DNA from: Octopus bimaculoides
Lineage: Eukaryota
DNA length: 32,051 bases
Assembly: GCF_001194135.2 (NCBI RefSeq)
Contig: NC_069008.1
Coordinates: 12,267,035 to 12,299,085 of the forward strand
Direction of reading: 5' to 3'
Below are positions 3,186 through 32,051 of this stretch, piece by piece (within the stretch, counting starts at the first letter, position 1; every line of letters begins with the position of its first letter). The translations under genes and the position numbers were made by a program. Under the pieces are notes generated by a model. It ran no database searches, was not told where the DNA came from, and was given only the letters and a program-made list of their open reading frames with translations.

Positions 3186-3905
3186 TTACTTTTCTGTTTG
3201 AATACCTACGTGTGAATAAGATTTCTCGTCTGTATGAAAACATCTGTGAAACATTAAGTCACTACTTCCAGAGAATGATTTACCACAGTTGTCACAGTAA
3301 TGTGGTTTCTCTCCTGTATGAATACGTTTATGAGAAGTCAACACACCACTCTGAGAGAATGATTTACCACAGATATCACAGTGATATGGTCTCTCTCCTG
3401 TGTGAATACGTCCATGTATAGTTAAGACACTTTTTTCACAAAATGATTTACCACAGATTTCACAATGATATGGTTTCTCTCCTGTATGAATTCGTTTGTG
3501 TGTAACTAAGGTATTTCCATAAGAGAAAGATTTACCACAGATATCACACTGATACGGTGTCTCTCCTGTATGGATGCGTTTATGTGTAGTTACATGTTCA
3601 TGTCGAGAGAATGATTTACCACAGATATCACAGTGATATGGTTTCTCTCCTGTATGAATGCGTTTATGTGTAGTTACATGTTCATGTCGAGTGAATGATT
3701 TACCACAGATATCACAGTGATATGGTTTATCTCCTGTATGAATACGGTTGTGTCTAATGAGGTTACCTTTTTGAGAAAATATCTTCTTACAGATATCACA
3801 CTTGTATGATGTTTTACTTGTTCCTGTCTTCATACCATCAGGAGAATCAATCCTTTTAGATTGTGTTTTAAAATTAACCTTGTTCTTAGTCAATTTATTT
3901 TCCAT
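3186..3905 (-). CDS. C2H2 zinc-finger protein, 7 tandem fingers (ZF1), single coding exon
   Basis: 239-aa ORF: 33-aa leader plus 7 C-x2-C-x12-H-x3-H fingers with TGEKP-type linkers. AATAAA lies on the minus strand at 3149-3154. Candidate acceptors are at 4032-4033 (TTTTCAG) and 4163-4164 (TTCTACAG). Confidence 0.92.
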   Translation of the reverse strand: MENKLTKNKVNFKTQSKRIDSPDGMKTGTSKTSYKCDICKKIFSQKGNLIRHNRIHTGDKPYHCDICGKSFTRHEHVTTHKRIHTGEKPYHCDICGKSFSRHEHVTTHKRIHTGETPYQCDICGKSFSYGNTLVTHKRIHTGEKPYHCEICGKSFCEKSVLTIHGRIHTGERPYHCDICGKSFSQSGVLTSHKRIHTGEKPHYCDNCGKSFSGSSDLMFHRCFHTDEKSYSHVGIQTEK

Positions 3906-4379: not shown

Positions 4380-4670
4380 TTAATTTTTCGTCTTCTTGTT
4401 CATGAGATGCATGTTGCCCTTCATGAAAATTAGCATGTCAAACTTTTCATCGACAGGGATGATCTCTTGGCCTTCATGATGTTCTCCTTGCCCATAGAGA
4501 ACAAATGCTCCACTGTAGCACTGGAGGGGATGGCTGTGTTGAACTTGATAAATAAGTCCACCAACACTTGCTCACCCAAGAAGGCAGCATCTATCAGCAA
4601 GTCCTTGGAGTTGGTCTCCAACCAGGTCTTGACCAAATTCTGAGCCTTGTCCATGCTGCTCTCTGTATAT
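4380..4670 (-). pseudogene. hAT transposase C-terminal dimerisation domain remnant (frameshifted)
   Basis: LFIKFNTAIPSSATVEHLFSMGK...AKRSSLS, then after a 1-nt shift DEKFDMLIFMKGN...*; matches the hAT pattern PSSAxVERLFS...LSDxxFExLLFLKxN. Confidence 0.8.
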
Positions 4671-5063: not shown

Positions 5064-5233
5064 ATAATAATATTTATAAGTTTAAAGCTTACAAGCGATC
5101 ACCGTGTATGGACAAATGAAAACAAAACCCACTTTTTCTTCCACTGAGGGCTTATATGCCCCGATATTAGACTATTTTCTTTAGTCACTGCACGGCGATC
5201 GCTTGTAAGCTTTAAGCTTATAAATATTATTAT
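5064..5233. repeat. 170-bp foldback / MITE-like element with 45-bp inverted arms
   Basis: 5064-5108 (ATAATAATATTTATAAGTTTAAAGCTTACAAGCGATCACCGTGTA) pairs with 5189-5233 with 3 mismatches. Confidence 0.85.
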
Positions 5234-5234
5234 A

Positions 5235-5644
5235 GGCGTAGGAGTGGCTGTGTGGTAAGTAGCTTGCTTACCAACCACATGGTCCCGGGTTCAGTCCCAC
5301 TGCGTGGCATCTTGGGCAAGTGCCTTCTACTATAGCCTCGGGCCGACCAAAGCCTTGTGAGTGGATTTGGTAGACGGAAACTGAAAGAAGCCCGTCGTAT
5401 ATGTGTATATATATATGTATGTGTGTGTGTGTTTGTATGTCTGTGTTTGTCCCCCCAACATCGCTTGACAACCGATGCTGGTGTGTTTATGTCCCCGTAA
5501 CTTAGCGGTTCGGCAAAAGAGACCGATAGAATAAGTACTAGGCTTCCAAAGAATAAGTCCTGGGGTCGATTTCTTCAACTAAAGGCGGTGCTCCAGCATG
5601 GCCGCAGTCAAAAGACTGAAACAAGTAAAAGAGTAAAAGAGTAT
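5235..5644 (+). mobile_element. tRNA-derived SINE family I, full-length and apparently young copy
   Basis: Intact A box (TGGCTGTGTGG) and B box (GGTTCAGTCCC), internal (TA)/(TG) microsatellite, many intact CpGs, and tail (AAAAGAGT)2. Confidence 0.9.
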
Positions 5645-7060: not shown

Positions 7061-7908
7061 GGCATAGGAGTGGCTGTAAGTAGCTTGCTTACCAGCCACA
7101 TGGTTCTGGGTTCAGTCCCACTGCGTGGCACCTTGGGCAAGTGTCTTCTACTATAGCCTCGGGCTGACCAAAGCCTTGTGAGTGGATTTGGTAGACGGAA
7201 ACTGAAAGAAGCCCGTTGTATATNNNNNNNNNNNNNNNNNNNNNNNNNNNNNNNNNNNNNNNNNNNNNNNNNNNNNNNNNNNNNNNNNNNNNNNNNNNNN
7301 NNNNNNNNNNNNNNNNNNNNNNNNNNNNNNNNNNNNNNNNNNNNNNNNNNNNNNNNNNNNNNNNNNNNNNNNNNNNNNNNNNNNNNNNNNNNNNNNNNNN
7401 NNNNNNNNNNNNNNNNNNNNNNNNNNNNNNNNNNNNNNNNNNNNNNNNNNNNNNNNNNNNNNNNNNNNNNNNNNNNNNNNNNNNNNNNNNNNNNNNNNNN
7501 NNNNNNNNNNNNNNNNNNNNNNNNNNNNNNNNNNNNNNNNNNNNNNNNNNNNNNNNNNNNNNNNNNNNNNNNNNNNNNNNNNNNNNNNNNNNNNNNNNNN
7601 NNNNNNNNNNNNNNNNNNNNNNNNNNNNNNNNNNNNNNNNNNNNNNNNNNNNNNNNNNNNNNNNNNNNNNNNNNNNNNNNNNNNNNNNNNNNNNNNNNNN
7701 NNNNNNNNNNNNNNNNNNNNNNNNNNNNNNNNNNNNNNNNNNNNNNNNNNNNNNNNNNNNNNNNNNNNNNNNNNNNNNNNNNNNNNNNNNNNNNNNNNNN
7801 NNNNNNNNNNNNNNNNNNNNNNNNNNNNNNNNNNNNNNNNNNNNNNNNNNNNNNNNNNNTTTCTAGCGCATTAATTGTCCACGTTAGTGGTCGACGTTAT
7901 TTTTTAAA

Positions 7909-7948
<40 letters not shown>

Positions 7949-8169
7949 ATGTTTGTGTGTCTGTGTTTGTCCCCCCAACATCGCTTGACAACCGATGCTG
8001 GTGTGTTTACGTCCCCGTAACTTAGCGGTTTGGCAAAAAGAGACCGATAGAATAAGTACTAGGCTTACAAAGAATAAGTCCTGGGGTCGATTTGCTTGAC
8101 TAAAAAAAAGGCGGTGCTCCAGCATGGCCACAGTCAAATGACTGAAACAAGTAAAAGAGTAAAAGAGTA
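7061..8169 (+). mobile_element. SINE family I spanning an assembly gap
   Basis: Head at 7061-7223, N gap, then microsatellite and 3' half at ~7910-8169 ending in (AAAAGAGT)2. Confidence 0.8.
7224..7859. other. Assembly gap (636 N)
   Basis: Run of N. Confidence 1.
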
Positions 8170-8269
8170 ATGATGTTAAGAATCACCTCTACCTGCTGAC
8201 ATGAATTGAAAGGAAGAAAGAAGGAAGCTTAATCTCCAATTCCAGTTTGTCCCCTCTTCAACTCCCCTG

Positions 8270-9365
8270 TTCTGCACTGACTTCCCTTATGTCCATGTAA
8301 TTTGTACACTGGCAGCAGGCCAATCAGGGTTTTATTTTCTCAGTACCTGCAGGAAGCCATCTTGTTGATATTAAAGGTAGGGTTGGATGGTAGGCATTCC
8401 AACAGAGCTGTATCATGCTTGGGCGAGTTTAAAAGGCTTTGTCACTCATGTATGATTGTTTGCAGTGTTGTGTCTGAATATTGTTCAATTTGGCCCTGTA
8501 ATCTAATTTGTACATCACTGTCAGTATGTGACCCTATACCCCAAATAAAAATCAAGCAGTTGAACTGTACTGCCATAGATGACAACTTGAACTGTTAGCC
8601 TTCGAAATTGATTCTATCTGCATAAGTAATATAGTCTTCATCTTCTTGTTTAACCAGTTGCATGCACGAATATCAAATATTGAACAGCAATGAACACTTG
8701 CCAAAGGTTTCTCACAGTTGTTATACAGTCTAGTTGTGGAGGCGCAATTGCCCAGTGGTTAGAGCAGCAGACTCGCAGTCATAGGATCGTGGTTTCGATT
8801 CCCAGACCAGGCGTTGTGAGTGTTTATTGAGTGAAAACACCTAAAGCTCCACAAGGCTCCGGCAGGGTATGGTGGTGAACCCTGCTGAACTCTTTCACCA
8901 CAACTTTCTCTCACTCTTACTTCCTGTTTCTGTTCTGCCTGTATTTCAAAGGGTCAGCCTTGTCACACTGTCACGCTGAATATCCCCGAGAACTACATTA
9001 AGGGTACACGTGTCTGTGGAGTGCTCAGCCACTTGCACATTAATTTCATGAGCAGGCTGTTCCGTTGATCGGATCAACTGGAACCCTTGACATCGTAAGC
9101 GACGGAGTGCCAACAAACAAAACATACAGTCTAGTTAAAAGTTTCTTTCTCTTAGATTCTTTGGCAGAATAAAATTACATTATCATGTGTGTTCTGCTGT
9201 GCCAAATTTCGTCAAATGTAACCTGGCCTGTCATGCATCTTTCTTGTGCTTCAGCTCGATTTTGAAAATATCTTTGAATTATTTGAACCAAAAGAAGAAA
9301 AAAACAATCCTGCACCAGGGTCATAATGGAACTCCATAATGCTGTTTGTAATGTATTGATGGAAA
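8270..9365 (-). pseudogene. Ty3/gypsy-type LTR retrotransposon gag remnant, split by a SINE
   Basis: Minus-strand translation with stops and shifts gives ITNSIMEFHYDPGAGL...KFGTAEH..CNFILPKN...CMQLVKQEDEDYITYADRIN...FNCLIFIWG...DVQIRL...TLQTIIHE...KHDTALLE, plus a CCHC-knuckle-like CCQC...GHKGSQC at ~8274-8317. Confidence 0.7.
8736..9123 (+). mobile_element. tRNA-derived SINE family II with tail X and a 13-bp TSD
   Basis: Head GTGGAGGCGCAATTGCCCAGTGGTTAGAGC...GGTTTCGATTCCC; TSD ATACAGTCTAGTT at 8723-8735 and 9124-9136. Confidence 0.9.
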
Positions 9366-12699: not shown

Positions 12700-13275
12700 A
12701 GCAAAAGGACCATTTCTATGAAGTTCCTCAATAGAAAGCATACCTCTATAACAAATGACTGTAATCTTGTTCTGATGGTTGGCAGCATTATTGGAGATGT
12801 TGAGCAATGCCACGATGGATAGTTGTTGGCACTCCATCGCTTACGACGTCGAGGGTTCCAGTTGATCCGATCAACGGAACAGCCTGCTCGTGAAATTAAC
12901 GTGCAAGTGGCTGAGCACTCCACAGACATGTGTACCCTTAACGTAGTTCTCGGGGATATTCAGCGTGACACAGTGTGACAAGGTTGGCCCCTTTGAATTA
13001 CAGGCACAACAGAAACAGGAAGTAAGAGTGAGAGAAAGTTGTGGTGAAAGTGTACAGCAGGGTTCGCCACCATCCCCTGCCGGAGCCTCGTGGAGCTTTA
13101 GGTGTTTTCGCTCAATAAACACTCACAACATCCGGTCTGGGAATCGAAACCGTGATCCTATGACTGTGAGTCCGCTGCCCTAACCACTGGGCCAATTGTG
13201 CCTCCACCGAGATGGATAGTATGTTGTAGACAAAGGATATGGTACAAGGAACAAAGAGGTGTGAAGAATCTTAGA
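12700..13275 (+). mobile_element. RTE LINE apurinic-endonuclease fragment interrupted by a SINE
   Basis: After removing the SINE the flanks translate as EQKDHFYEV...NDCNLVLMVG..IGDVEQCHDG*YVVDKGYGTRNKEV*RIL. Confidence 0.6.
12824..13207 (-). mobile_element. SINE family II with tail X and a 10-bp TSD
   Basis: Reverse complement closely matches 8736-9123; TSD GATGGATAGT at 12814-12823 and 13211-13220. Confidence 0.9.
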
Positions 13276-16268: not shown

Positions 16269-17321
16269 TTACAATGTATCACAATGAGATGGCTTCCTTC
16301 CTGTATGAGTATGATTGTGTCTAGTTAAGTTACCTCTCTGCGAAAAAGATTTACCACAAATATTACAGTGATATGGCTTTTCTCCTGTATGAATACGCTT
16401 GTGCCTAATTAAGACATTACTTTCAGAGAACGATATACCACAGATATCACAGCGATGTGGCTTCTCTCCTGTATGTGCACGTTTGTGTATAGTTAAAGTA
16501 TTTCTCCGAGAGAATGATTTACTACAGATATCACAATAATATGGTTTTTCTCCTCTATGAATACGTTTGTGTGTAGTTAGGTTACAACTTAGAGAGAAGG
16601 ATTTACCACAGATATCACAGTGATATGGCTTCTCTCCTGTATGACTACGTTTGTGAGAAGCTAAGCAACTGGTTCCAGAGAAAGATTTACCACAGATATC
16701 ACAGTGATATGGTTTCTCTCCAGTATGAATACGTTTGTGAGAAGCTAAACAACCTGTTTCAGAGAATGAATTACCACAGATTTCACATTGATATGGTTTC
16801 TCTCCTGTATGAATGCGTTTGTGTTTAGTTAAGCTATCACATCGAGAGAATGATTTACCACAGATATCACAGTGATATGGTTTTTCTCCTGTGTGACTAC
16901 GCTTATGAGAAGTTAAGTTACTACATTGAAAGAATGATTTACCACAGACATCACAATAATATGCTTTCTCTCCTGTATGAATACATTTGTGTTTAACCAA
17001 GTCACTACTTCCAGCAAATGATACATCACAGACATCACACTGGTATGGTTTCTCTCCTGTATGAATACGTTTATGTCTAGTTATGTGATGTCTCTGAGAA
17101 AATGACTTACCACATATATCACAGCAGTATGGCTTCTCTCCTGTATGACTATGCTTGTGAGAAGTTAAGCTATGACTTTGAGAGAATGATTTACCACAGA
17201 TATCACATTGATATGGTTTCTCTCCTGTATGAGTACGTTTGTGTATAGTTAATACAGCACTTTGAGAAAACAATCTACCACAGATATCACAGTGATATGA
17301 TTTTCTCATTCCTTTTGACAT
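16269..17321 (-). CDS. C2H2 zinc-finger protein, 12 tandem fingers (ZF2)
   Basis: 350-aa ORF: MSKGMRKS, then 12 x 28-aa C2H2 units with TGEKP-type linkers, then a truncated 13th finger (SHCDTL*). Confidence 0.9.
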
Positions 17322-18360: not shown

Positions 18361-18546
18361 GGTGCAGACATAGCTGTGTAGTTAAGAAATTTGATTCACA
18401 AGCGTGTGGTCTTGGGTTCAGTCCTACTGTGCAGTACCTTGAATCTTCTACTTTAGCTCTGGGATAACCAAAGCCTTTTGAGTGGATTTGGTAGATGGAA
18501 ACTGAAAGAAGCCTGTCATGTAGTCATACATATAAATATATATATA
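18361..18546 (+). mobile_element. SINE family I 5' half running into a gap
   Basis: GGGTTCAGTCCTACTGTGC...AAAGCCTTTTGAGTGGATTTGGTAGATGGAAACTGAAAGAAGCC. Confidence 0.75.
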
Positions 18547-18841
18547 NNNNNNNNNNNNNNNNNNNNNNNNNNNNNNNNNNNNNNNNNNNNNNNNNNNNNN
18601 NNNNNNNNNNNNNNNNNNNNNNNNNNNNNNNNNNNNNNNNNNNNNNNNNNNNNNNNNNNNNNNNNNNNNNNNNNNNNNNNNNNNNNNNNNNNNNNNNNNN
18701 NNNNNNNNNNNNNNNNNNNNNNNNNNNNNNNNNNNNNNNNNNNNNNNNNNNNNNNNNNNNNNNNNNNNNNNNNNNNNNNNNNNNNNNNNNNNNNNNNNNN
18801 NNNNNNNNNNNNNNNNNNNNNNNNNNNNNNNNNNNNNNNNN
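18547..18841. other. Assembly gap (295 N)
   Basis: Run of N. Confidence 1.
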
Positions 18842-19155: not shown

Positions 19156-19161
19156 TATGAC

Positions 19162-19535
19162 ATATAGTCGTGGCTGCGAAGAAGATGCTTGCTTTCCAAC
19201 CACGTTTCTGGGTTCAGTCCCACTGTGTGGCACCTTGGGCAAGTACCTTCTACTATAGCCTCGAGCAGATCAAATCCTTGTGAGTAGATTTGGTAGACGG
19301 AAACTGGAAGAAGCCCATCATATACATGTATATAATTGTGTGTGTATGTGTTTTTCCCCAGCAGCGCTTGACAATTGATGCTGATGTGTTTATGTCCCTG
19401 TAACTTAGCGGTTTGGCAAAAGAGACCAATAGAATAAGTACTAGGCTTACAAAGAATAAGTCCTGGATTCGATTTCTTCAACTAACACCCATGGCCGCAG
19501 TCAAATGACTGAAACGAGTAAAAGAACAAAAGAAT
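19162..19535 (+). mobile_element. SINE family I, near full length
   Basis: Head, core and tail match 5235-5644. Confidence 0.85.
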
Positions 19536-19605
19536 ATGTATGTATATGAATATATGGACGAATGCAACAGCGTTAAGAGTGACCTACTGTTTATCCCTGT
19601 TACAA

Positions 19606-21260: not shown

Positions 21261-22648
21261 TTTTGTACAAACAGGTATCAAAATACATCGGAAATTGGGG
21301 TATATTCTCGTGTAAGGAATCTGTAGATCGGGGAGAGAATTTGATTTATATAATATATCAGTGTAGATATCCAGGCATGCATGCGCAGTCTTATATTTGT
21401 GTAATGTTTATGGACGTGAGGTAGACGTGAATATATAAAAGATAGAATTCGTACACTTCTTTGATTGGAATGTAACTTTCTGTGAAAATTACTTACTGGG
21501 TTAAGAATGACATGACAATTGAAAGACCTCATCATACTAATTAGATAAACTATTATAAATATAATCAGTTAAATATTTTTGTCTTGTAAGATTTCACACT
21601 TTTAGTGCAGTTTTTAGTAACTGATAATATCTCCCTCTCACTTACTCTCATTCTCCATGCAGTATTTGAACTTAGATTGCAGCATTCTAGTATTTCAAAT
21701 CAAAAACAGATTGCAGTAACGAACCTGATTAAATCTTTTTATTTAGAAACTTTAAAGATTACATTTCAATAAGTTAATTGTGAAATTAGTAGAGAAAATA
21801 TTTATAGAATTTACAATTAAATGACATTTTCAAGATTTCTGTGTTGCAGTAAAATAACCAGGTACTGAAACTTGTTTTAATTACATCATTGCGAATTATA
21901 CAGTCTCTCAGTTCCATAGTATTGTATTTATAAGTAAAAATAAAGTTTCTTAATATAGAAATATGTTTAATGTATTATAAGAAAATTAGTTTTATGACGA
22001 AAAAATACAATCATAGGCGATTGTCAAAGACATTTTATGGACTTCTGCTGTTTTAACTTGTTTCACCATTCGATCTTTAACCTGGAAATGGAATGAGAAA
22101 TATAATAAATATCAATTTTTAAACTCAATAATCCCAGGCCCTTATAATTTATACATAGCCTCAATTGTCATCTATTGTTTTCGCAAACGTGAGAAGATGC
22201 CTCTACAGAAGAAACAGGGATGAGCAATACAACTTATATTCAAATCATTAGTCACACGAACTAACGGTGAGGTATTAATTATCAGGAATATATTGTAAAA
22301 TATTGGCAACAGAACAACTGAACAACTTTATATGAAAAAAAAAGGACTGTTTAGTTCTATTCTGCTTAAGGTGTGCATGGTTGTATGTACATTTTATATG
22401 TAAATGGCTGTATATATATTTTATATATACCTTTATTGCTATATGAATATTTTACAAGGGTCTTTAATGGCCGTGTGGATATAATTTACAAAGACCTGTC
22501 TATGGCTGTATGTGTATACAACATGGGATTATCCACAGCTGTATGTATATGATCTACATGGATTTACCTATGGCTGTATGAATATTTTACATATGTCCGT
22601 CTTTGGTTATGTGTACTGCAACAAATATTTATATATTTGTGCATATCT

Positions 22649-23090
22649 TTATTCAACCATATATGCCTCGTTTTGTTCCATTACATTTCGCTTCATTTGA
22701 GGTAGCTTCATGATTCCATCCTCTCAGAACTAGGCATCTTTCTGGGCCATGAACTGGTCTAAGTGGTTTTTAAGTCTTTCAAAGAATTGAAGTTCTTCCC
22801 ATGAAGAGAATTTTGCGGGGTCCTAATAAATGGTAATCCGAAGGTGCAAGGTCCCGTGAGTATGATGGGTGTCATAGGATATCCCAACCTGGCTGGGATA
22901 TCCTATCACACCTCGGGTCTCCGAGGAAAAATTGAGGTCTAGTTTTATCCCGAAAGAAAGCGACACCCTTCCGATTAGCCAGTCCTTGACGTTTTTCATT
23001 GATGGTCTAACTGACAACAAATTGTCTGAATTGTACGTATGATTTTCGGAAGGAGGCGTTTCGAAGATGAGGCAAAACTTAGTTGTGATC
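22649..23090 (-). pseudogene. Mariner transposase C-terminal remnant
   Basis: Decayed translation TINEKRQGLANRKGVAFFRDKTRP...HPSYSRDLAPSDYHL...QNSLHGKNFNS..DL.NHLDQFMAQKD..GIMKLP...EQN.AYMVE*, containing the YSPDLAPSD motif. Confidence 0.85.
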
Positions 23091-23517: not shown

Positions 23518-23617
23518 NNNNNNNNNNNNNNNNNNNNNNNNNNNNNNNNNNNNNNNNNNNNNNNNNNNNNNNNNNNNNNNNNNNNNNNNNNNNNNNNNNN
23601 NNNNNNNNNNNNNNNNN
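23518..23617. other. Assembly gap (100 N, probably of unknown size)
   Basis: Exactly 100 N. Confidence 0.95.
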
Positions 23618-23843
23618 GAAGAAAAAGACGACGGGAAGGAAAGGGGAAAGAAGTAGTATAGGGGAAGCAAGAAACAGGAGAAAGATTAAGACTAGGAGAA
23701 AGACAAGAAGAATATAAATGAGACAGAGACAAACATCCTCACACATACATTTGCGTAGAAAGTAAAGAGAGTGAGAAAGCGAAGTAGTAGGGAAAGATAT
23801 TTAATACGCAAGATATTTAATTAGCAAGTCTGATTCAACTTAC

Positions 23844-23915
23844 AAATTCTCTAAACTGGTAAGGTCTTGGAAGGTGTGTTCTAGAATATTCGTGAATTTG
23901 TTAGTACTCAATTCT
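23844..23915 (-). CDS. LRR exon A (72 nt, phase 2-2)
   Basis: TTGCAG|A GAA TTG AGT ACT AAC...GAG AAT TT|GTAAGT, encoding ELSTNKFTNILEHTFQDLTSLEN. Confidence 0.88.
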
Positions 23916-24258
23916 CTGCAACATAAAGGTAAGTTTATAAGAAATTCATAGGGAAAGACGTGTGATAAGATATCAAATATTACGGCTAGAAATTAAATTT
24001 GACATTAAAGAGTGAATTAAATGATATATAAAATAAGAAATTGCAACGAATATTCATATTAATAGGATTACTTGTGGGTCTATAAAAGTGTGTACTACTA
24101 AACAGATATAATTTGCATCCGTCAGTTATGTATATATAGTTATATGGGAATGGGGAAAATAGTAGTGGAGGAAAAACAACATTGCAAGGAGAGGAAGACA
24201 TTGACATATAGAGATACATCGTTTATGAAATAGCATCAACGAGACTAAACCAACTTAC

Positions 24259-24330
24259 ATTATCTTTAAATTGGTAAGGTCCTTGAATGTTCCTTGTTCA
24301 ATGGTCATAATTTTATTATTAGCCAGCCAA
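24259..24330 (-). CDS. LRR exon B (72 nt, phase 2-2)
   Basis: TTACAG|T TGG CTG GCT AAT AAT...AAG ATA AT|GTAAGT, encoding WLANNKIMTIEQGTFKDLTNLKI. Confidence 0.88.
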
Positions 24331-25169
24331 CTGTAACATGAAGCGGGGTTTATAAGAAATATCAGAGGCAAATTTGAGATAAAATATAAACTTTAAGAAT
24401 AAACTATTATGTTTAACATGAAAGTGATAATTAGAGAGAAGTAAGTAATAATTATATAAAATAAGAAATTGTGATGAATGTTGATCGCTATAGGAGTTAC
24501 AATGGATCAACTCCTAAAAAATATATATTGTATTCCTCTTATTTGTGTCTACTTGTTCCAGAGATTTTTAATTTGACATCCCATAAATTATTCTGTGGAT
24601 TTATATTTTACAGCATTGGATAATTTATTTGTAATTTTTGTTATGTAGATTATTTATCACACATTATTATATAATGACAATATCCATTGGGGAGGCTAAA
24701 AAGTTGGAGTAAGTCTGTTGTACAAAACCATTATTTGTTTTTCTGGTGTTTAGTCACATGAATTGTGATGATGCGTATAAACATCTGAGTGTCATACTCG
24801 GTGAATTATGACCTAATGAGAAGTTAGATTTTCCTGAAAACTTTCAATGCAACATTATTCGTTTGTATTCATTTATGCTTTATTTATATGTATTTATATA
24901 TACGTATACACAGAAGGAAAACTGGGAAGCTAAAGAAAAGAGAAAGAGTAGGACAAAAATGAAGAAAGAAAGACTATGACAAAAAATGAAAAGGGAAACA
25001 AGAAAGAAAGGGAGAAAAAAGAAAAGAAGTGAATTGTGAAGAGAAGGAAGAACGAAGGGGAAATATATGGTGGATGAAGTGGTGGAGAAGAAGAGAAAAA
25101 ATAGGATGAGGAGAAAAAGAAAAAGAAAGGTTGGAAAAATTCTGAAGGAAAAGGAATAGGGAGGAGAAG

Positions 25170-25171
<2 letters not shown>

Positions 25172-25243
<72 letters not shown>
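25172..25243. repeat. (AGT)24 microsatellite within a purine-rich tract (~24915-25330)
   Basis: Perfect trinucleotide run. Confidence 0.95.
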
Positions 25244-25506
25244 TGAAGAAGAGAATGATATAAAAGAAGGGGAATAAAAGAAAACGAAAATGAGGGAACA
25301 GTATGGTAGAGGTATTAATAGCGGAAAGACAGGAAAAAGAAGAGTATAAAAGATAGAAGAAAGACTGTATGTAGTACTGTATGTAGTAGAGAGAAATAGA
25401 CCCCATACACAGTCTTACATACAGATAGTGAGAACGAGAGGAAGACATTTAATATATAGAAATATATCATCAATAAAACAGTATCAACAAGACTGATCCA
25501 ACTCAC

Positions 25507-25578
25507 AGTTCCTTTAAATTGGTCAGGTTTCGTAAGGTACGTTCTTTAATTTCTTTGACTTGGTTATTATTCAGGGAT
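25507..25578 (-). CDS. LRR exon C (72 nt, phase 2-2)
   Basis: TTACAG|A TCC CTG AAT AAT AAC...AAG GAA CT|GTGAGT, encoding SLNNNQVKEIKERTLRNLTNLKE. Confidence 0.88.
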
Positions 25579-26234
25579 CTGTAACAGGAAAAGGATTTGA
25601 AAAGAAATTGTATGGGGGAAAATTTGTGATAAAATATCATGTATAATGTATAATCATAAAATATCGTATATAATCATGAAATATCATATATGATCATAAA
25701 CTATCATGTATAATCATAAAATAAAGAGATATTTATAGAAAATCAGAGATTGTGATGAATGTTGATATTAATAGGAGTAGTGATATACAAGAGTATACTT
25801 CTGAAAAATATTGTAATTGTACTGTATGTGTATTTAGTTTTCCCAGAAGTTTTAAATCGTATATTCCGTTAATTATTTCATGGCTTGTGGATTTTTATAT
25901 TCTATTGTGATTTGCCTGAAATTATTGTCATGTAAGATTATTTATTTCACACTTTCTTTTTGCGACGTTGGGCAAAGTAAGCCTGCTGTATAAAACCATT
26001 GTTTTTCTCGTATTAATTCACATATGGATTGTGGTGGTGTGTATGAACATCTGAGTAGTATCAGATGTCATACTTCCGGTGATTTGATTTAGCTGTGAGA
26101 CTTTCCTGAAAATTTGCTATACCACACTATTATGCTTTATGTATATACATCTCTATGTCGTCATTGTCGCAGGCGTCGGCGGCGGCGGCAGCGGCTGCTT
26201 TATCTCATATCCGTGAATTTAGTTTCTTCTTAGC

Positions 26235-26550
26235 TAAATGACTTTATGGTGCTGATGGCTCTGTAGATCAATTATTGCATAGAAAAGTCGATGATATTGA
26301 CTGTTTGGTAATGTTGATGGACGAAGTGGTTGATTTTGTTGAACTTTCCTTTCCTGTCATTTGATTTCTTCCTTTTCTCGTCTGGTGGCTTCGAAGATTT
26401 TGCTTCCGATGGTGATAGAACACCACCATTTGGTACGGTTTCAGGTTTATGTTTCAAACGATTTAGGCTCAATTCCAGTGACTTTCAGTGTTGTTTTGAG
26501 TTGGCCCTTGCATCTTTTCCCTAACTCGAGCTTCTGCGTTGAAGGACAAA
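26235..26550 (-). mobile_element. RTE/BovB-like LINE ORF2 C-terminus
   Basis: GKRCKGQLKTTLKVTGIEPKSFET*T*NRTKWWCSITIGSKIFEATRREKEEIK*QERK...RLFYAIIDLQSHQ. Confidence 0.75.
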
Positions 26551-26879
26551 TGGGAAAACAAAGAAAGGAATAGGAGTAGGAGGACAATTAAACAAATAAC
26601 GAGAAGTCGAAAAAGAATGAAAAGAAGGAGAAAAGGAAACTGAAAGAGAATAATGAGAATGGTGAGAAGGAGGAAGAGGTGATGGACGAGTAGGTGGATG
26701 AGGAAGAGGAGGCAATGATTGAAGAGGTGGAGAAGGAAGAGAAAAACAAAACAAATGTAGGAAAAAGAAAAGGATAGAAGTAGAAAGTAAAAGCTTTTTA
26801 AAATGAGGATATTGTGAAGAAGAGAAGAGAAGGAGGATGAAGATATCTTAACTTTTCTCTCCAAAAACTCAACGCCAGT

Positions 26880-27300
26880 TTTTGAAAAAATAGACTTAAA
26901 TTGGACTTAAAGCCATGGTTTTTAGCGTAACATTCCCAGAAATGCAAGAAGTTATTTAAACTATCCTGTGATCCTTCCCAATCAAAAAGACGTCATCAAT
27001 GAACCGTAACCAGAGTGCTGGTTCCTGACCATGTAAGGATTTGAATGTCTTCAGTAACTGTGTCTCGAATTTCGTATTGATGATATTAGCGAAATTAACT
27101 GCCATGGGGGTACCCATGGCACCCCACCCCCTCGTCTAGTGGTAAAAATTTTGTCCAAACTTCATTGTGTTACTTCACAAACTTTAATAACTTACAGAGA
27201 AAATTAGATTGGAAAACTCTTGTTTGACCGTTTTTCAAAGGGATTCATGCATGCTTCAACCCCTTCATCGTAGTCAGTATTGGCATATAGTGAAGACCTC
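26880..27300 (-). mobile_element. Penelope-like element reverse-transcriptase fragment
   Basis: SLYANTDYDEGVEAC...GAMGTPMAVNFANI..KFETQLL...PALWLRFIDDVF, i.e. the GxAMG and WxRFIDD motifs. Confidence 0.8.
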
Positions 27301-27309
27301 TCATCGTGG

Positions 27310-28690
27310 TCATCCATGAATGACTACCTGCAACCTTTGATTTTCGCATCTTTTCAAAAAGACATCAAGTGCTAAGAACCTTTCTGATGAACTTATCTGT
27401 TCCGAAGAGGCCAACCTTCTGTGGAAGTTATACAGGACATTCATTCCAGCCTTCTTTAACCATTTGCCTGTGTCATTACTCACAGTTCTTAATGTATCAA
27501 TTATCACAGGTACAATGTTTATACATTTCATATTCCAAATCCTCACAATCTCGAATTTTAAGGGGTTGTTTCTTTTAAACATTTCTTCTTTCTTCACAAT
27601 CCTAGTATCAGCTGGACATGATCGTCCTCTCAGTAAATTCGTTGTTTTTCTTGTCAATTGTTGTTATATTTGATTTGTCATTTTTTTTTATCCGTTTGTA
27701 ATTTTCCCACTCAGGCACCCTTTTTACCTGATAATTATACAAAATATTCCCAGCTTCAAATCTCCATTTCTGACAAAACTTCCAGTGCAAAGCTTTCACT
27801 TGGTCTTGCTTTCATTTTTTAAAATTCTCCCTTTGCCAACTTGGAGCATTCTGCAACAATGTGTGCCATTCTTTTATCCCAAATTCCACATGCTCTACAC
27901 TTTGCTGACACCTCCTCATATACATACTTTCTCAAGTTGTTTGCAGCGCTTGCTCATGAGCTGCTGTAATAAGATCCTGCGTCTTTTTCAATTCCCCTTT
28001 TATCAGCCAAACCCAGGTTTTCGTTCCACATACATCCTCAGTGGTTTTCCAAAACGGACCATGCGAAGGTCTTTCTTCAATCTGTTTAATATGCTCTCTT
28101 TAAATTTCAACCTTATCCTTTTCTCGTATTCCACACTTGATCATTTGTTCATTATCATTTCTTACCGTTAGTAACTTCTTCGCTGTTCTGTAGATAATCT
28201 ACTAAGCCGTTTTGTTCCATCTGCACACACTCTTCCACAACAATGAAACCTCTGCCACCCTCGGTTCTCTTCAATTACAACTGTCTTTCGGGTTGCGGGA
28301 TTCATACATAGTCGACAGCTTTATAATTTTTCGAGTTTCTGTATTACGTTTTTTGTCCAATCTACAGTTCCAGTTCTACATCTGATGACGGGCGCTTCTC
28401 TTGAATTTATTGTTTCAATACCATTTTTCAAATACAACTTTGGCAGTAATATTTTTTCATTCACCTTGTATACTCCCTTTTTGTAATTTGTTCCATCTCT
28501 TCATGTTTTATCTCATCTACCTTCAGTATTCTCAAATACTTATAAAACTATCCCTTTTCAACAGCTATCATTGACATTTCAATTCTCTGGCTTTTTTTAG
28601 AATCTTCTCCGTTTCATTAACAATATAGAACACTTCAATCCCGAATCTCATGCCTACATCTTTTGAGAGAATGCAAACAATATGTATAGT
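27310..28690 (-). mobile_element. R4/Dong-clade LINE ORF (RT thumb, CCHC and RLE), decayed
   Basis: ILSKDVGMRFGIE...YKYLRIL.VDEIKHEEM...INSR..PVIR...VDWTK...EGGRGFIVVEECV...KCRACG...HIVAECSKLA...KALHWK...LKFEIVRIWNMK..IVPVII...QKVGLFGT.KFIRKVL*. Confidence 0.85.
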
Positions 28691-28699
28691 ACAAAACTT

Positions 28700-29110
28700 T
28701 CTAGCTAATTCGTATTTTTCGCATAGACAGAAGATAAACAAAATTGAAGTATATCTCTCTTTAGCCAGCCAGGTTCTAACGTTGAAGTAATGATAAAACA
28801 AAATCGAAATATATCTATAAGTTGCCAAGAAGCTTTAAACTTTAAAGAAAAATAATCAAAATATATCTATCCTTGGCCAACATGATTCACACGTCAAAGA
28901 AACAAATAAAAACATTAGCCAACAGGATTCGGGCGTTGATGAAACAAATAAAACAAAATCGAAATATGTCTGTCATTATCCAGGAAGTTTCCAACGTTAA
29001 AGAAACAAATAAAGCAAAATCGAAATATATCTGTCGTTAGCAAAAAGATTCTGAAAATTAAAGACAACAAAACAGAATATCTTTCATTAGCTAACAAGAA
29101 ACGTTGAAGG
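28700..29110. repeat. Diverged minisatellite, ~7 copies of ~55-65 bp
   Basis: Recurring AAACAAAATCGAAATATATCT.TC.TTAGCCA...AACGTT(G/A)AAG. Confidence 0.75.
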
Positions 29111-29624
29111 TGGACAAAATGAAGACGAATATAATGAAGAAAATAGGAATTAGAAGAAATGATAATATATGGAGATTAAGAAGGAGGAGGAGGAGAGGAG
29201 GAGGGGAGAAGGAAAAGGAGAAAAAGTAGATGATGATGAGCAGGAAGAGGATGTTATTGATGATGATAAAGAAAGAAGGAGAATTAAAAGATTATAATGA
29301 AGAAACAAAGGTGGAGAAAGAATGAAAAGAAGTATATATGATAACAAAGAACAAGAAAATGATTAAGGAAGAGGAGAACAAAGATAATGAGAAAAATAAG
29401 AATAGATTGAAGGAAAAAGAGAATGATATAAACGAAAGAGAATAAAAGGGATGAGAAGATGAGGCAAAAGAAGGAGAAATGTAGAGGAAAGAAATGAAGC
29501 ACAATGCTTGGATGTTGTAGAGGCGAGAAATCAGGGAGAAAAGAGAGAGAGAGGAGGGTAAGACATTTAATATTTAGAAGTACACTGTCATTGAAATAGT
29601 ACCAACAAGCTTAATCCAACATAC

Positions 29625-29696
29625 AATATCTCTAAGCTGGTAAGGTTTTCGAAGGCTCTCTCAGCAATATTCGTGATGCTATTTCCATTCAGATTT
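29625..29696 (-). CDS. LRR exon D (72 nt, phase 2-2)
   Basis: TTACAG|A AAT CTG AAT GGA AAT...GAG ATA TT|GTATGT, encoding NLNGNSITNIAERAFENLTSLEI. Confidence 0.9.
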
Positions 29697-31300
29697 CTGT
29701 AACATGAAAGTAACTTTATAAGAAATTCTATAGAGCAGATTTGTGGTAAAGTATAAAATGATATGGATAAACATGTAAAATATAGAATTAAATTACATTT
29801 ATATAAATAAGAAATTGTGATGAATGCTCATATTAATAGGATCACCAGTGGATCGATACAAGTTCGTACTCTAAAAAAAATATAAATTGTATCTGTCAGT
29901 TATGTGTAATATAGTGGTGCTAGTTTTTTAAATCTTCATTTTTTAAAATTATTTTCTGGTTTGCGGATTTTATATTTTATATGGTTGTAATGTAGATTAT
30001 TTATCAAATAATATTTTATAAAGACAATATCTGTTTCGGAAGCAAAACAAATAAAGTATATCTGATGCATAAACACCATTATTTGTTTCTCTGACTTGTA
30101 GTCTCACATTAATTAAGACGTAGTGTGAAAATATCTTAGAAGTAGTGGCTGTCATTTTCTTGTGACTTATGATGCATTGAGCTATGGTACTTTCTTAGAA
30201 AATCTGGATGGAAATATTATATACATATAATTCTGCTTGTTCGTTCGTTCACACGTTACGGTTTACCTAGTTAGAAAGAAGAGTGAGAGACGGAGGGAAG
30301 AAGAGTGAAAGAAAGAAGGAAGATGTATACATACGTATGTATGTATGCAAGTATATATATATGTGTGTGTGTACGCTAGATGGCGAAGAGGCGAAGAACG
30401 AGAGAAAAAGAGGGAGATAATGGTGTTAACAACGTGAGGTAGGGGAAAGTAATAATTATCATGCTAAGATCGAATGTGTAATGTTATTGCATGGTTAGTT
30501 GAAGGGAGAGGCGAAAAGAGAGAGTCGGTGTGTGTTAACGCTGAGAAGTGAGTGACATTGCTGTTACGTTGTGTGGTTAGTTAGAAAGAGGTAGAGAGTA
30601 GAAATAAAGATATAAACATGTTACGTGAATGGGCATGTATAATAGTTTAAGTGAGAGGCAAAGAAAAAGTTAGAGTGAGTGAAAGAGAAAGTGAACGTAA
30701 GTGAGGGAGAGCGTGTGAGTGATTATTGACTGAAAGGAACGCAATAGTGGAAAGCAGTTACATTTTATACGTGGTATGGTAGAATATTGTGACAGCCAAC
30801 ACAAATAAAAGTTTAGTTGTTATAGTTTTTAATGTTCAACTGTTTCTATACTTTTAATCCATCAATGTATCTATGTGGATAGATAGATTCATTGACGGAT
30901 AGAAGATAGAAAGACCGATGGCCAGATATACCGACACATAGTTAGATCAAAGTGAAATAATCTTAGCAAATAGCTGCTGTGGATGTTACTTTCATCTACT
31001 TATGTGTGGCAGCCGAAAGGCTGAAGCTATGTTGGAGTACCTCAATTATTTAGGTTTCTTCAAATTATTTGGTTTTAATGTTTGTCTATATTTTTAGAGT
31101 AAGCAGCTACATACATCAACAAAAATATGCGTAGAATATGATAAATAGATAGATAGATACATAAATACACTAGTAAGTAGATAAGTCGGTAAGTTGAGGC
31201 ATTGATTGATCGCTTCTTCAATACTGCCTATTTTGAATTGTACATCTTCTAAGAATCAAATGTTTCAGAAAAATACAATTTCGTCACACAATTTTCGAAA

Positions 31301-31323
31301 TACCCGTGGAATTTCCACGGGTA
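31301..31323. other. Perfect GC-rich hairpin (possible decayed Helitron 3' end)
   Basis: TACCCGTGGAA-T-TTCCACGGGTA; no intact CTAG follows. Confidence 0.5.
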
Positions 31324-31401
31324 CTGTTTGTATATGTAGGTTTTTAATACATAGAAATATATCATCAATGAAATAGTATGAACAAGACTGGTCCAACTTA
31401 C

Positions 31402-31473
31402 AGTTCCTTTAGACTGGCAAGATTCTGGAAAGGTCCTTCTTCAATATTTGTAATTTCATTATAATACAGATTT
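31402..31473 (-). CDS. LRR exon E (72 nt, phase 2-2)
   Basis: TTATAG|A AAT CTG TAT TAT AAT...AAG GAA CT|GTAAGT, encoding NLYYNEITNIEEGPFQNLASLKE. Confidence 0.9.
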
Positions 31474-32014
31474 CTATAATATGAAAATGAGTTAAGATCG
31501 TATGGAGCAGATTTGTGATACACTATATAATATTACGGATAAACAATAATGTTTAACATCGATATAAAAAATAAGAAATTGTGATGAATCTTGATACCAA
31601 TATGATTTCTGATTGGTCGATACACGTGTGTACTGAACAAAATATAAATTGTATCCGTCATCTATGGGCATCTTACATTTCGTTAACTATTTTCTGGTTA
31701 GTGGATTCTATATTATATTTATACTCTGTTGAATAACTTGCCAGTAGTTTTTGTACTGTAGAGTTTTTTTTACACTCCTTTATGAAGACAATATTTATTT
31801 AGGAGGCAGGAGAGTTCGAGCATGTCTGATGTAGAAAACTATTATTTCTTTTTTTATGTTTAGTCTCAGGTGAATTGTGGTGATGTATTTGAACATCTAA
31901 GTAACAGTGGCTGCTATACCCCAGGGGATTTATGGTTTGAACAATGGTACTCTCCAAGAAAACCTGCTGTTTTCTTGTGTCAAAAACGACACAATTTAAT
32001 GGTTTGTAATTGTG

Positions 32015-32017
<3 letters not shown>

Positions 32018-32051
<34 letters not shown>
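32018..32051. repeat. (TA)n microsatellite
   Basis: Dinucleotide run at the window end. Confidence 0.95.

What the first reader, a model, noticed from the sequence alone, without database searches (positions are those of the whole stretch)
23790..32010. Hidden array of five interchangeable 72-nt LRR exons built by exon+intron unit duplication
Seen: five exons of exactly 72 nt lie on the minus strand, each with a canonical AG/GT. All introns are phase 2 and the exons splice without stops: NLYYNEITNIEEGPFQNLASLKEL-NLNGNSITNIAERAFENLTSLEIL-SLNNNQVKEIKERTLRNLTNLKEL-WLANNKIMTIEQGTFKDLTNLKII-ELSTNKFTNILEHTFQDLTSLEN. Each exon sits in a recognisably paralogous intron block (about 23790-24170, 24200-24900, 25440-26140, 29560-30240, 31340-32010), so the repeat unit is exon plus intron. 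Known: 24-aa 'typical' LRRs encoded one per 72-nt exon occur in LGR/RXFP/GRL101-type GPCRs and other extracellular LRR proteins; detectable homology between their introns is unusual. Inference: this is a recently expanding LRR solenoid. Because every exon is symmetric, any subset can be skipped in frame, so isoforms or alleles could differ in repeat number and binding surface. The concave-face residues vary strongly between copies (YY, NG, NN, AN, ST). The ORF track misses the array completely.
Basis: partly seen in the sequence, partly recalled or inferred. Interest (0 to 1): 0.85.

Follow-up and report, generated by a model that had tools for sequence, protein, structure and literature searches.

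The report
Part of a 29-exon octopus LRR gene
The five 72-base exons are real and kept by selection, but they are only repeats 2-6 of an old gene for a secreted leucine-rich-repeat protein of about 29 repeats, shared by two octopus species, and the rest of it falls at an assembly gap, so this is an ordinary, badly annotated member of a known gene architecture and not a recently expanding array.

Summary
Five 72-nt, phase-2, AG/GT exons on the minus strand (31473-31402, 29696-29625, 25578-25507, 24330-24259, 23915-23844) splice into an open LRR peptide (LRR_8 E=1e-36). Each sits in paralogous intron sequence, about 550 nt upstream and 70 nt downstream.

The window is Octopus bimaculoides chromosome CM046628.1. 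The orthologous Octopus vulgaris locus changes the picture:
- It holds a signal-peptide/LRRNT exon, 29 single-LRR exons (26 of 72 nt, one of 75, two of 63; all phase 2), two dead relics and a cysteine cap exon.
- The window's exons are one-to-one orthologues of LRR 2-6: 95% nt identity, dN/dS 0.31, introns 90-94%.
- Collinearity stops exactly at the 100-N gap, 226 nt past exon 5, and resumes 47 kb later in O. vulgaris. "Five" therefore reflects the gap and the window edge.

The duplications are old. Paralogous units are 60-70% identical, at most 79%, against about 91% for orthologous introns, so "recently expanding" is refuted. In-frame skipping is formally possible for every junction but untested. 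The nearest paralogues are the LRR ectodomains of octopus adhesion GPCRs. Both species' gene models (212 and 247 aa) are truncated.

The parts
31402..31473 (-). E1, a 72-nt phase-2 exon encoding NLYYNEITNIEEGPFQNLASLKEL. It is LRR 2 of the gene and the orthologue of O. vulgaris L082:22105-22176.
29625..29696 (-). E2, a 72-nt phase-2 exon encoding NLNGNSITNIAERAFENLTSLEIL. It is LRR 3 and the orthologue of L082:22540-22611.
25507..25578 (-). E3, a 72-nt phase-2 exon encoding SLNNNQVKEIKERTLRNLTNLKEL. It is LRR 4 and the orthologue of L082:25170-25241.
24259..24330 (-). E4, a 72-nt phase-2 exon encoding WLANNKIMTIEQGTFKDLTNLKII. It is LRR 5 and the orthologue of L082:25607-25678.
23844..23915 (-). 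E5, a 72-nt phase-2 exon encoding ELSTNKFTNILEHTFQDLTSLEN(L). It is LRR 6 and the orthologue of L082:26021-26092.
31343..31966 (-). Unit U1: upstream intron block, E1 and downstream block, paralogous to U2-U5.
29542..30206 (-). Unit U2.
25423..26131 (-). Unit U3. The stretch 25448-25516 is 91% identical to 31343-31411 of U1, against 67% for the rest of the two units, which marks a conversion or recombination tract.
24186..24859 (-). Unit U4.
23825..24140 (-). Unit U5. It is short because it directly abuts U4, and intron 4 is only 343 nt.
23518..23617 (.). A run of exactly 100 N, an assembly gap 226 nt downstream of the E5 donor. Collinearity with O. vulgaris ends at 23618 and resumes at 22969, and 47 kb of O. 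vulgaris with 23 more LRR exons and the cap exon has no counterpart.
22063..22081 (-). The 19-nt last coding exon of the called 212-aa gene model (ag|G TTA AAG ATC GAA TGG TGA). It is in frame with E5 and is probably a predictor's closure forced by the gap.
   Evidence: the arithmetic uses
22382..22969 (-). The first stretch after the gap that is again collinear with O. vulgaris (L082:73389-73977, 92%).
26800..28500 (-). Decayed retroelement debris inside intron 2. It explains that intron's length of 4046 nt against 2558 nt in O. vulgaris.
   Evidence: the 'RFIDDVF' reverse-transcriptase-like motif was recognised by eye only

Best explanation
The five exons are LRR 2-6 of a conserved octopus gene for a secreted, heavily N-glycosylated protein of the 'typical' LRR class. 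The architecture is read from the orthologous O. vulgaris locus: a signal peptide and cysteine N-cap in one exon, then about 29 repeats each on its own symmetric phase-2 exon, then a cysteine C-cap exon that ends in a stop. Each 72-nt exon adds one 24-residue turn (xLxxNxIxxIxxxxFxxLxxLxxL). The intron splits the codon of a scaffold leucine, so every junction recreates L, I or F. The array grew long ago by tandem duplication of exon-plus-intron units of about 0.7-1.2 kb, most simply by unequal crossing-over, with some later gene conversion between units. Since then the scaffold residues and splice sites have been held by purifying selection, the solvent-exposed positions have drifted or diversified, and the introns have gained and lost kilobases. 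In the O. bimaculoides assembly the remainder of the array falls into a 100-N gap. That is why only five exons appear here and why the called gene model stops after them with an artefactual 19-nt exon. Shown: the exons, their phases, the unit paralogy, orthology and synteny, and the selection statistics. Inferred: secretion, constitutive inclusion of all exons, the mechanism of duplication, and that the missing 47 kb exists in the animal.
For: Exon anatomy and LRR identity. Unit paralogy. Species and locus. Orthologous locus and 1:1 exons. The synteny break coincides with the N run. O. vulgaris architecture: searches show 29 in-frame LRR exons, two relics, an SP/LRRNT exon of 188 nt from its ATG and a cap exon; one search gives an 811-aa conceptual product with LRR_8 E=1.8e-228; one search counts 29 N-x-S/T sequons. 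Model arithmetic: 188+72+360+19 = 639 nt is exactly 212 codons plus a stop, the size of the O. bimaculoides called product. Purifying selection between species: exons 95.3% identical, pS 0.10, pN 0.033, dN/dS 0.31, against intron flanks 90-94%. Among paralogues, scaffold codons give dN/dS about 0.10 against 0.61 for variable codons. A neutral-decay simulation at the observed divergence gives P(no stop in all five)=0.03, P(all 35 scaffold residues kept)<1e-4 and P(all 20 AG/GT bases kept)=0.009. Old age: paralogue identity is 0.60-0.70, at most 0.79. Conversion tract between U1 and U3. Paralogy to adhesion-GPCR ectodomains.
Against: No transcript evidence could be examined, so neither inclusion of all exons nor the protein's ends are verified. 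The O. vulgaris annotated model (CAI9742651.1) joins only 5 of the 29 LRR exons and ends in two unrelated exons, so even there the true mRNA is unknown. The upstream part of the O. bimaculoides gene lies outside the window and could not be fetched. The 47 kb could be truly deleted in O. bimaculoides rather than unassembled. The cap exon in O. vulgaris ends in TAG, but a weak GTTAGT donor sits just before it, so further exons cannot be ruled out, although no GAIN or 7TM homology was found up to 93.6 kb.
Confidence: 0.8

Rival explanations
1. Cassette reading (the reader's idea; it is compatible with the best explanation as an added layer). Because all 29 exons are symmetric and junction-neutral, transcripts include varying subsets, giving secreted LRR proteins of different length and binding face from one gene.
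For: Every forward junction among E1-E5 encodes L, I or F. All O. vulgaris LRR exons are multiples of 3 nt and phase 2. The evidence-combining O. vulgaris annotation joins only V03, V04, V08, V17 and V21 (annotation method in PMC10700109). A paralogue is listed by RefSeq as 'isoform X4'. In brown-alga ROCO genes with the same 72-nt phase-2 design, alternative splicing of LRR exons is reported (PMC11378527).
Against: No junction reads were seen here. The O. vulgaris model also carries two non-LRR tail exons and looks like a mis-join in a repetitive array. Splice sites are uniformly strong (ttacag|A ... |gtaagttg), as expected for constitutive exons. No docking/selector-type RNA structure was found. 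Purifying selection acts on each of E1-E5, which says nothing either way.
Confidence: 0.2
2. O. bimaculoides really has a truncated gene. A 47-kb deletion removed LRR 7-29 and the C-cap, leaving a short protein of six LRRs that ends in a new 19-nt exon.
For: The called model closes in frame at 22063. No other LRR unit exists in the 23.5 kb beyond the gap.
Against: The break coincides to the base with a conventional 100-N scaffold gap. This assembly comes from Hi-C scaffolding of an older assembly (Albertin et al. 2022, as cited), and that the older assembly was short-read based is my own knowledge. The 19-nt exon has no counterpart in the O. vulgaris model. dN/dS of 0.31 shows continued constraint but cannot separate the two cases.
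Confidence: 0.15
3. Dead fragment: a decaying relic of an LRR gene that is no longer spliced or translated.
For: Both annotated models are short and odd. Dead units do occur in the O. vulgaris array, at L082 31517-31612 and 62737-62807.
Against: Orthologous exons are more conserved than introns, with dN/dS 0.31. All 10 splice sites and all 35 scaffold residues are intact, which is very improbable under neutral decay.
Confidence: 0.03
4. The paralogous intron blocks are kept for a function, for example an exon-bracketing RNA helix or a splicing control element, and not only by descent.
For: A 21-nt box lies 95-161 nt upstream of each of the five exons (5 matches against 0 expected). Its core can pair with positions +17..+24 of the next intron, with two compensatory changes in U5. 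In the five units the flanks (0.70) are better kept than the variable codons (0.54).
Against: In O. vulgaris the box survives in only 6 of 29 units and is deleted at the orthologues of E1 and E4, whose exons are intact, and the pairing is not maintained. Orthologous introns diverge at about the synonymous rate, 6-10% against pS 0.10. Over the whole array the flanks (0.595) are not better kept than the exons (0.635). Only 25/500 shuffles matched the observed helix, so the evidence from five sequences was weak from the start. Rfam finds nothing.
Confidence: 0.03
5. Mutually exclusive alternative exons: only one of the tandem paralogous exons enters each mRNA.
For: The exons are tandem, homologous, and of equal length and phase.
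Against: 72 is a multiple of 3, so double inclusion is in frame. The introns are at least 343 nt, so there is no steric block. No docking or selector structure was found. LRRs work as stacked arrays, and paralogous proteins carry 12-18 consecutive repeats.
Confidence: 0.01

Closest known systems
Octopus vulgaris CAI9742651.1, 'leucine-rich repeat and transmembrane domain-containing protein 2-like' (locus OX597841.1:5.62-5.72 Mb)
   Same: It is the orthologous gene. Flanks are collinear, E1-E5 have 1:1 counterparts (95.3% nt), and the splice sites and phases are the same.
   Different: The deposited 247-aa model uses only 5 of the 29 LRR exons and two unrelated tail exons. The locus itself supports an 811-aa SP-LRRNT-29xLRR-cap product. 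No transmembrane segment was found, despite the name.
LRR ectodomains of octopus adhesion GPCRs: XP_052821851.1 / XP_014788728.1 (LOC106882527, 'GPR126-like') and XP_052833921.1 ('chaoptin isoform X4'). This is the octopus-specific adhesion-GPCR expansion with LRR and Death domains described in PMC6408891.
   Same: Identity is 43% over the first 481 residues, starting at the signal peptide and the CxCxC N-cap. The repeat class is the same, and the C-cap is homologous (48%, E=8e-17).
   Different: Those proteins continue into a cysteine-rich module, GPS, 7tm_2 and a Death domain. None of these was found in the orthologous locus. This gene therefore looks like an LRR-only, secreted paralogue with more repeats (29 against 12-18).
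Gonadotropin-receptor / LGR gene structure (one LRR per ~72-bp exon, all introns phase 2; Koo et al. 1991 as cited in PMC11378527)
   Same: One repeat per exon, 72 nt, uniform phase 2, and in-frame skipping is formally possible. LGR4/5 are among the best PDB sequence matches.
   Different: There is no rhodopsin-type 7TM, LDLa or hinge region here. PDB matches to IGFALS, LRRC15, LRIG1 and TLRs are as good, so the similarity is at the level of repeat class. Whether the intron sits at the same residue of the repeat was not testable.
Brown-alga (Ectocarpus, Saccharina) ROCO genes with shuffled 72-nt LRR exons (PMC3341825, PMC11378527)
   Same: 72-nt single-LRR exons, phase 2, inactivated relic exons inside the array, variable residues on the ligand face, and proposed alternative splicing.
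   Different: The origin is independent. The exon starts at a different residue of the repeat (GxxP...LxLxxNxLx there, xLxxNxI...LxxL here). There are no antisense relic exons, no ROC-COR domain, and no near-identical recently shuffled copies.
Tetrahymena young LRR genes with arrays of exactly 90-bp phase-2 exons (PMC6564038)
   Same: Long arrays of equal-length exons with an extreme phase-2 bias, explained by clonal exon-unit amplification through unequal crossing-over.
   Different: The exons are 90 bp and not 72, it is a protist, it involves thousands of genes, and the expansion there is recent and lineage-specific. Here it is one old array that is stable between two species.

Membership tests
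'Typical' extracellular LRR class (Pfam LRR_8 / LRR clan) | A 24-residue period with LxxLxLxxNxLxxLxxxxFxxLxx | tested here: met
   LRR_8 E=1.3e-36 for the 5-exon peptide. All 35 scaffold residues are present. Per-position entropy in 26 O. vulgaris repeats shows L, L, N, I, I, F and L nearly invariant.
'Typical' extracellular LRR class (Pfam LRR_8 / LRR clan) | Cysteine-rich N- and C-terminal caps and a signal peptide flanking the repeats | tested here: inconclusive
   These are absent from the window. They are present in the orthologous O. vulgaris locus: SP plus a CxCxC cap exon at L082:16333-16520 and a C-cap exon at 68779-68953 homologous to paralogue caps. Pfam LRRNT and LRRCT did not reach threshold on the conceptual protein.
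Single-LRR symmetric-exon gene architecture (as in gonadotropin receptors/LGRs) | One repeat per exon of about 72 nt, with all introns in the same phase (2) | tested here: met
   5 of 5 exons in the window. In O. vulgaris, all 29 LRR exons are phase 2 and 26 of them are 72 nt.
LGR / RXFP / GRL101-type GPCR | A rhodopsin-family 7TM domain downstream of the LRRs | tested here: not met
   No 7TM-like ORF or Pfam hit in the window's ORFs. tblastn with a 7TM-bearing paralogue finds only the LRR and cap regions in the 93.6-kb orthologous locus. The cap exon ends in a stop.
LGR / RXFP / GRL101-type GPCR | LDLa modules N-terminal to the LRRs (RXFP/GRL101 subtype) | tested here: not met
   No LDLa motif in the window. 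In O. vulgaris the repeats follow directly on the SP/LRRNT exon.
Octopus LRR-containing adhesion GPCRs (PMC6408891 group) | GPS/GAIN plus 7tm_2 | tested here: not met
   The paralogue P0134 has GPS, 7tm_2 and Death domains. No homologous exons are present in L082 beyond the cap. The gene is related to the family by descent of the ectodomain only.
Brown-alga-type shuffled LRR exon system | Near-identical, recently moved LRR exons, including copies on the non-coding strand | tested here: not met
   No unit on the opposite strand. The best paralogue pair is 79% identical. Two same-strand relics exist.
Mutually exclusive exon cluster | A mechanism that forbids joint inclusion: a frame shift, an intron too short to splice, or competing RNA pairing | tested here: not met
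   72 nt is in frame. The introns are at least 343 nt. No conserved pairing was found.
Functional (expressed) gene | Spliced transcripts across the junctions | not testable with these tools
   No read or transcript data were available. The indirect evidence is dN/dS 0.31 and the intact splice sites.

The most novel reading that the evidence does not exclude
The 29 symmetric, junction-neutral single-LRR exons act as a cassette repertoire. Individual transcripts, or cell types, would include different subsets, as the O. vulgaris model that joins 5 of 29 might hint. One gene would then yield a large set of secreted LRR proteins that differ in length and concave-face residues. That would be a Dscam-like diversity device in a cephalopod, in a gene family tied to the octopus-specific adhesion-GPCR expansion.
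Probability: 0.08. Interest if true: 0.8.

Novelty: new member of a known kind. Interest (0 to 1): 0.35.

Why it matters
The value is mostly curation. A roughly 800-residue secreted LRR protein of octopuses is represented in two reference annotations by 212- and 247-residue fragments. The O. bimaculoides chromosome assembly appears to lack about 47 kb of it at a scaffold gap. The locus is also a clean animal example of intragenic growth by exon-plus-intron unit duplication in which intron homology is still readable. Orthologues show that the array has been stable since before the O. bimaculoides/O. vulgaris split, and the intron similarity can be attributed to descent and not to function. It adds an LRR-only relative to the octopus-specific LRR/adhesion-GPCR family. 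If the cassette-splicing reading proved true it would matter much more, and the public Iso-Seq data make that directly testable.

Tried and rejected
- **Word-indexed protein search with the spliced peptide.** It gave only microbial LRR proteins of at most 45% identity. It even missed the O. vulgaris orthologue, so its silence means nothing. Later searches with the ZNF and with P0173 showed that the database holds eukaryotes, and the cluster look-up showed that it holds octopus proteins too, though the window's own ZNF is absent.
- **Representative search with the spliced peptide.** The workaround was a profile of five contiguous 30-aa window translations.
- **Walking upstream of the window via called genes.** This reached only window coordinate 27321. 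Paralogues P0134 and P0131 are not on record as gene positions.
- **Metagenome scan for the intron box.** It returned 78 chance hits, none homologous.
- **Non-coding RNA searches.** Rfam gave none and ARAGORN gave none.
- **RNA pairing between flanks.** RNAduplex z-scores were inconsistent. The RNAalifold energy was -5.6 kcal/mol. The 5' splice-site hairpin shows no covariation. The exon-bracketing 7-bp helix looked promising in five units but fails in the 29 O. vulgaris units.
- **"Exons evolve faster than introns" as a sign of positive selection.** It holds for the five units (0.63 against 0.70; variable columns 0.54, p=2e-4). It does not hold for the whole array (0.635 against 0.595) or between species, so I do not claim positive selection.
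- **Other domain searches.** Pfam on the other ORFs of the window found only C2H2 zinc fingers. LRRCT and LDLa regular expressions found nothing.
- **Antisense ORF in the upstream blocks ('EIVMNVD...').** Only the first residues are conserved, so I rejected it by eye.

Full report
**1. The observation**

On the minus strand the window holds five exons of exactly 72 nt:

| Exon | Coordinates |
|---|---|
| E1 | 31473-31402 |
| E2 | 29696-29625 |
| E3 | 25578-25507 |
| E4 | 24330-24259 |
| E5 | 23915-23844 |

Each follows a pyrimidine tract plus YAG and precedes GTAAGT, GTATGT or GTGAGT. Every exon starts with the third base of a codon and ends with two bases of the next, so all introns are phase 2.

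The bare shape is common. The window has 227 AG-N72-GT segments, 51 of them open in that frame, but only these five carry the LRR scaffold. An HMM of the five repeats finds nothing else in any frame of the window. Pfam scores the spliced peptide at LRR_8 E=1.3e-36.

The intron paralogy is real. Alignments run about 550-620 nt upstream and about 70 nt downstream of each exon at 64-76% identity. The five copies lie in register with spacings of 415, 1248, 4118 and 1777 nt.

**2. Where the window comes from**

A zinc-finger ORF of the window is a called gene on CM046628.1 of GCA_001194135.2. That assembly is Octopus bimaculoides (PMC10700109). Window coordinate x corresponds to record position x + 12,267,034.

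In the same record a called gene with a 212-aa product runs on the window's minus strand, from beyond 27321 down to 22063. Position 22063 is the last base of a TGA in 'ttccag|G TTA AAG ATC GAA TGG TGA', which is in frame with E5. So the array is covered by a gene model.

An exact run of 100 N lies at 23518-23617, only 226 nt beyond the E5 donor.

**3. Selection, from the window alone**

- The five exons are 63% identical to each other. Scaffold codons are 83% identical (dN/dS about 0.10) and the remaining codons 54% (dN/dS about 0.61).
- A neutral-decay simulation at the observed divergence gives P=0.03 for no stop in all five exons, below 1e-4 for keeping all 35 scaffold residues, and 0.009 for keeping all 20 AG/GT bases. 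The copies therefore diverged under selection for coding and for splicing.
- In these five units the flanking introns (about 70%) are better kept than the exons, and much better than the variable columns (p=2e-4).
- One tract crossing the exon-intron border is 91% identical between U1 and U3, against 67% elsewhere. That points to conversion or recombination between units.

**4. The orthologous locus**

A profile of five contiguous window translations was accepted. Among its hits was P0173, 67% identical to the peptide over 96 residues.

P0173 is CAI9742651.1 of Octopus vulgaris. Its locus, L082, was fetched as 93.6 kb of OX597841.1.

The window's minus strand is collinear with L082. E1-E5 correspond one-to-one to exons at 22105, 22540, 25170, 25607 and 26021, with 22-23 of 24 residues identical.

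Collinearity runs exactly up to the N run (window 23618 = L082 26302). It resumes at window 22969 = L082 73389. The 47 kb of O. vulgaris in between has no counterpart in the O. bimaculoides assembly.

**5. What the gene is**

In L082 there is a first coding exon with a signal-peptide-like start and a CxCxC cap. It is 188 nt from its ATG at 16333 to a phase-2 GTAAGT donor.

It is followed by 29 single-LRR exons between 19807 and 67135. Twenty-six are 72 nt, one is 75 nt and two are 63 nt. All are flanked by AG/GT and all are phase 2, nearly all in the context ttacag|A ... |gtaagttg.

Two dead relics sit on the same strand: a 70-nt unit with a weak donor at 31517-31612, and a 5'-truncated unit at 62737-62807.

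A cysteine cap exon at 68779-68953 ends in TAG. It is 48% identical to the C-cap of an O. bimaculoides paralogue.

Joined, these exons give an open 811-residue product with LRR_8 E=1.8e-228 and 29 N-x-S/T sequons.

The arithmetic 188 + 72 + 5x72 + 19 = 639 nt equals 212 codons plus a stop. The O. bimaculoides model is therefore best read as SP/LRRNT exon + orthologue of V01 + E1-E5 + a 19-nt closure forced by the gap. This is an inference.

The window's five exons are thus LRR 2-6 of about 29.

**6. Age and constraint**

- Between the two species the five exons are 95.3% identical (pS 0.10, pN 0.033, dN/dS 0.31). Seven of the eight amino-acid changes fall at non-scaffold positions. The flanking introns are 90-94% identical.
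Introns diverge at about the synonymous rate, so there is no sign of special constraint on them.
- Among the 28 O. vulgaris units compared (the 63-nt exon at 60083 was found afterwards), exon identity averages 0.635 and flank identity 0.595. The closest pair, V26/V27, is 79% in both.
- Paralogue divergence is several times the orthologue divergence, and the unit count in the shared part is the same in both species. "Recently expanding" is refuted for what can be seen.
- Intron lengths are fluid. O. vulgaris lacks the upstream blocks of the E1 and E4 orthologues, and O. bimaculoides has extra retroelement debris and low-complexity sequence.

**7. The intron box**

A 21-nt box lies 95-161 nt upstream of each window exon. 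It can pair with +17..+24 of the following intron, with compensatory changes in U5.

With 29 more units the idea fails. The box survives in 6 of 29 units. It is deleted at the orthologues of E1 and E4, although those exons are intact. The pairing is not kept. The intron similarity is shared descent plus some conversion.

**8. Family**

PDB sequence matches (IGFALS, LGR4/5, LRRC15, LRIG1, TLRs) only place the repeats in the "typical" class.

The informative relatives are octopus proteins:
- XP_052821851.1 / XP_014788728.1 (LOC106882527, "GPR126-like") has LRR + GPS + 7tm_2 + Death domains. It is 43% identical over the first 481 residues, beginning at the signal peptide.
- XP_052833921.1 is listed as "chaoptin isoform X4".

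This is the octopus-specific adhesion-GPCR group with LRR and Death domains described in PMC6408891.

No GAIN, GPS or 7TM homology exists in L082 after the cap exon. None, and no LDLa, exists in the window. The gene is best described as an LRR-only, probably secreted paralogue of that ectodomain. The LGR/RXFP/GRL101 suggestion fails its defining features.

**9. Comparison with known architectures**

One LRR per 72-nt phase-2 exon is the classical gonadotropin-receptor design (cited in PMC11378527). It recurs independently in brown-alga ROCO genes, where shuffling, relic exons, positive selection and alternative splicing are reported (PMC3341825, PMC11378527). A 90-bp version occurs in Tetrahymena (PMC6564038).

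The octopus array shares the design and has same-strand relics. It lacks antisense copies and young copies.

In-frame skipping is possible for every junction. The O. vulgaris annotation, built from transcripts, proteins and ab initio calls, joins only 5 of the 29 exons. I treat that as a lead and not as evidence, because the same model ends in two unrelated exons.

**10. Verdict**

The unit-duplication inference is right.

The number five, the recency and the receptor family are wrong or unsupported. The diversity idea is open.

This is a new, poorly annotated member of a known kind of gene architecture. Its practical consequences are a probable 47-kb hole in the O. bimaculoides assembly and truncated models in two annotations.

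Noticed in passing
window 16269-17321 (-) and 3186-3905 (-): Two intact C2H2 zinc-finger ORFs (350 aa with 12 fingers; 239 aa with 7 fingers) with an 84-nt finger period. The first is a called gene in GCA_001194135.2. The second is collinear with the start of a 2053-aa multi-finger gene downstream of the LRR gene in O. vulgaris, while the first lies in about 15 kb that has no collinear counterpart there.
   Followed up: partly
window 7224-7859, 18547-18841, 23518-23617: Three runs of N (636, 295 and exactly 100), which are assembly gaps. The third coincides with the loss of 47 kb relative to O. vulgaris.
   Followed up: yes
window ~1606-1975, 5222-5644, 7072-8170, 18445-18541, 19157-19547; many sites in L082: An abundant interspersed repeat of about 400 nt, with 4-5 copies in the window and more than 20 copies in the O. 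vulgaris locus at 84-96% identity. It often sits inside the LRR introns. tRNA-like heads (GGCTTAGTGGTTAGGG) lie at 2451, 10748 and 15387, and ARAGORN calls no tRNA. It is probably a SINE family.
   Followed up: no
window 8750-9116 vs 12823-13192: An inverted repeat, 92-94% complementary, with arms about 3.7-4 kb apart. The same element occurs several times in L082 (10983-11354, 65000-65652), so these are two inverted copies of a dispersed element.
   Followed up: partly
window ~26800-28500 (-), inside LRR intron 2: Stop-riddled retroelement debris with a reverse-transcriptase-like 'RFIDDVF' motif (26959-27135). Pfam gives no hit on the pieces.
   Followed up: partly
window 25172-25243; 24920-25450; 29100-29560; 30270-30750; 32018-32051: A perfect (AGT)24 microsatellite. 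Long CT-rich low-complexity tails directly follow the downstream block of the units, and TA-rich tracts lie at their 5' edges. These are possible substrates for unequal crossing-over.
   Followed up: no
window 4430-4654 (-): A 74-aa ORF whose end (…SSATVEHLFSMGKENIMKAKRSSLSMKSL…) looks like the C-terminal dimerisation region of a hAT transposase. This is by eye only, with no Pfam hit at E<=0.01.
   Followed up: partly
L082 31517-31612 and 62737-62807 (O. vulgaris): Two dead LRR units inside the array: one of 70 nt with a shifted acceptor and a weak GTTCGT donor, and one lacking its 5' third and its acceptor. They show that units die as well as duplicate.
   Followed up: yes
L082 10001-83576 (O. 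vulgaris gene model CAI9742651.1): The deposited model joins the SP/LRRNT exon to only five of the 29 LRR exons (V03, V04, V08, V17, V21) and then to two non-LRR exons at 79481-79555 and 83502-83573. This is either a mis-join in a repetitive array or a hint of extensive exon skipping.
   Followed up: partly
window 31343-31411 vs 25448-25516: A 69-nt tract spanning the last 9 nt of the exon and 60 nt of intron is 91% identical between units U1 and U3, against 67% for the rest of the units (permutation p<0.01). This marks gene conversion or a recombination breakpoint inside the exon.
   Followed up: partly
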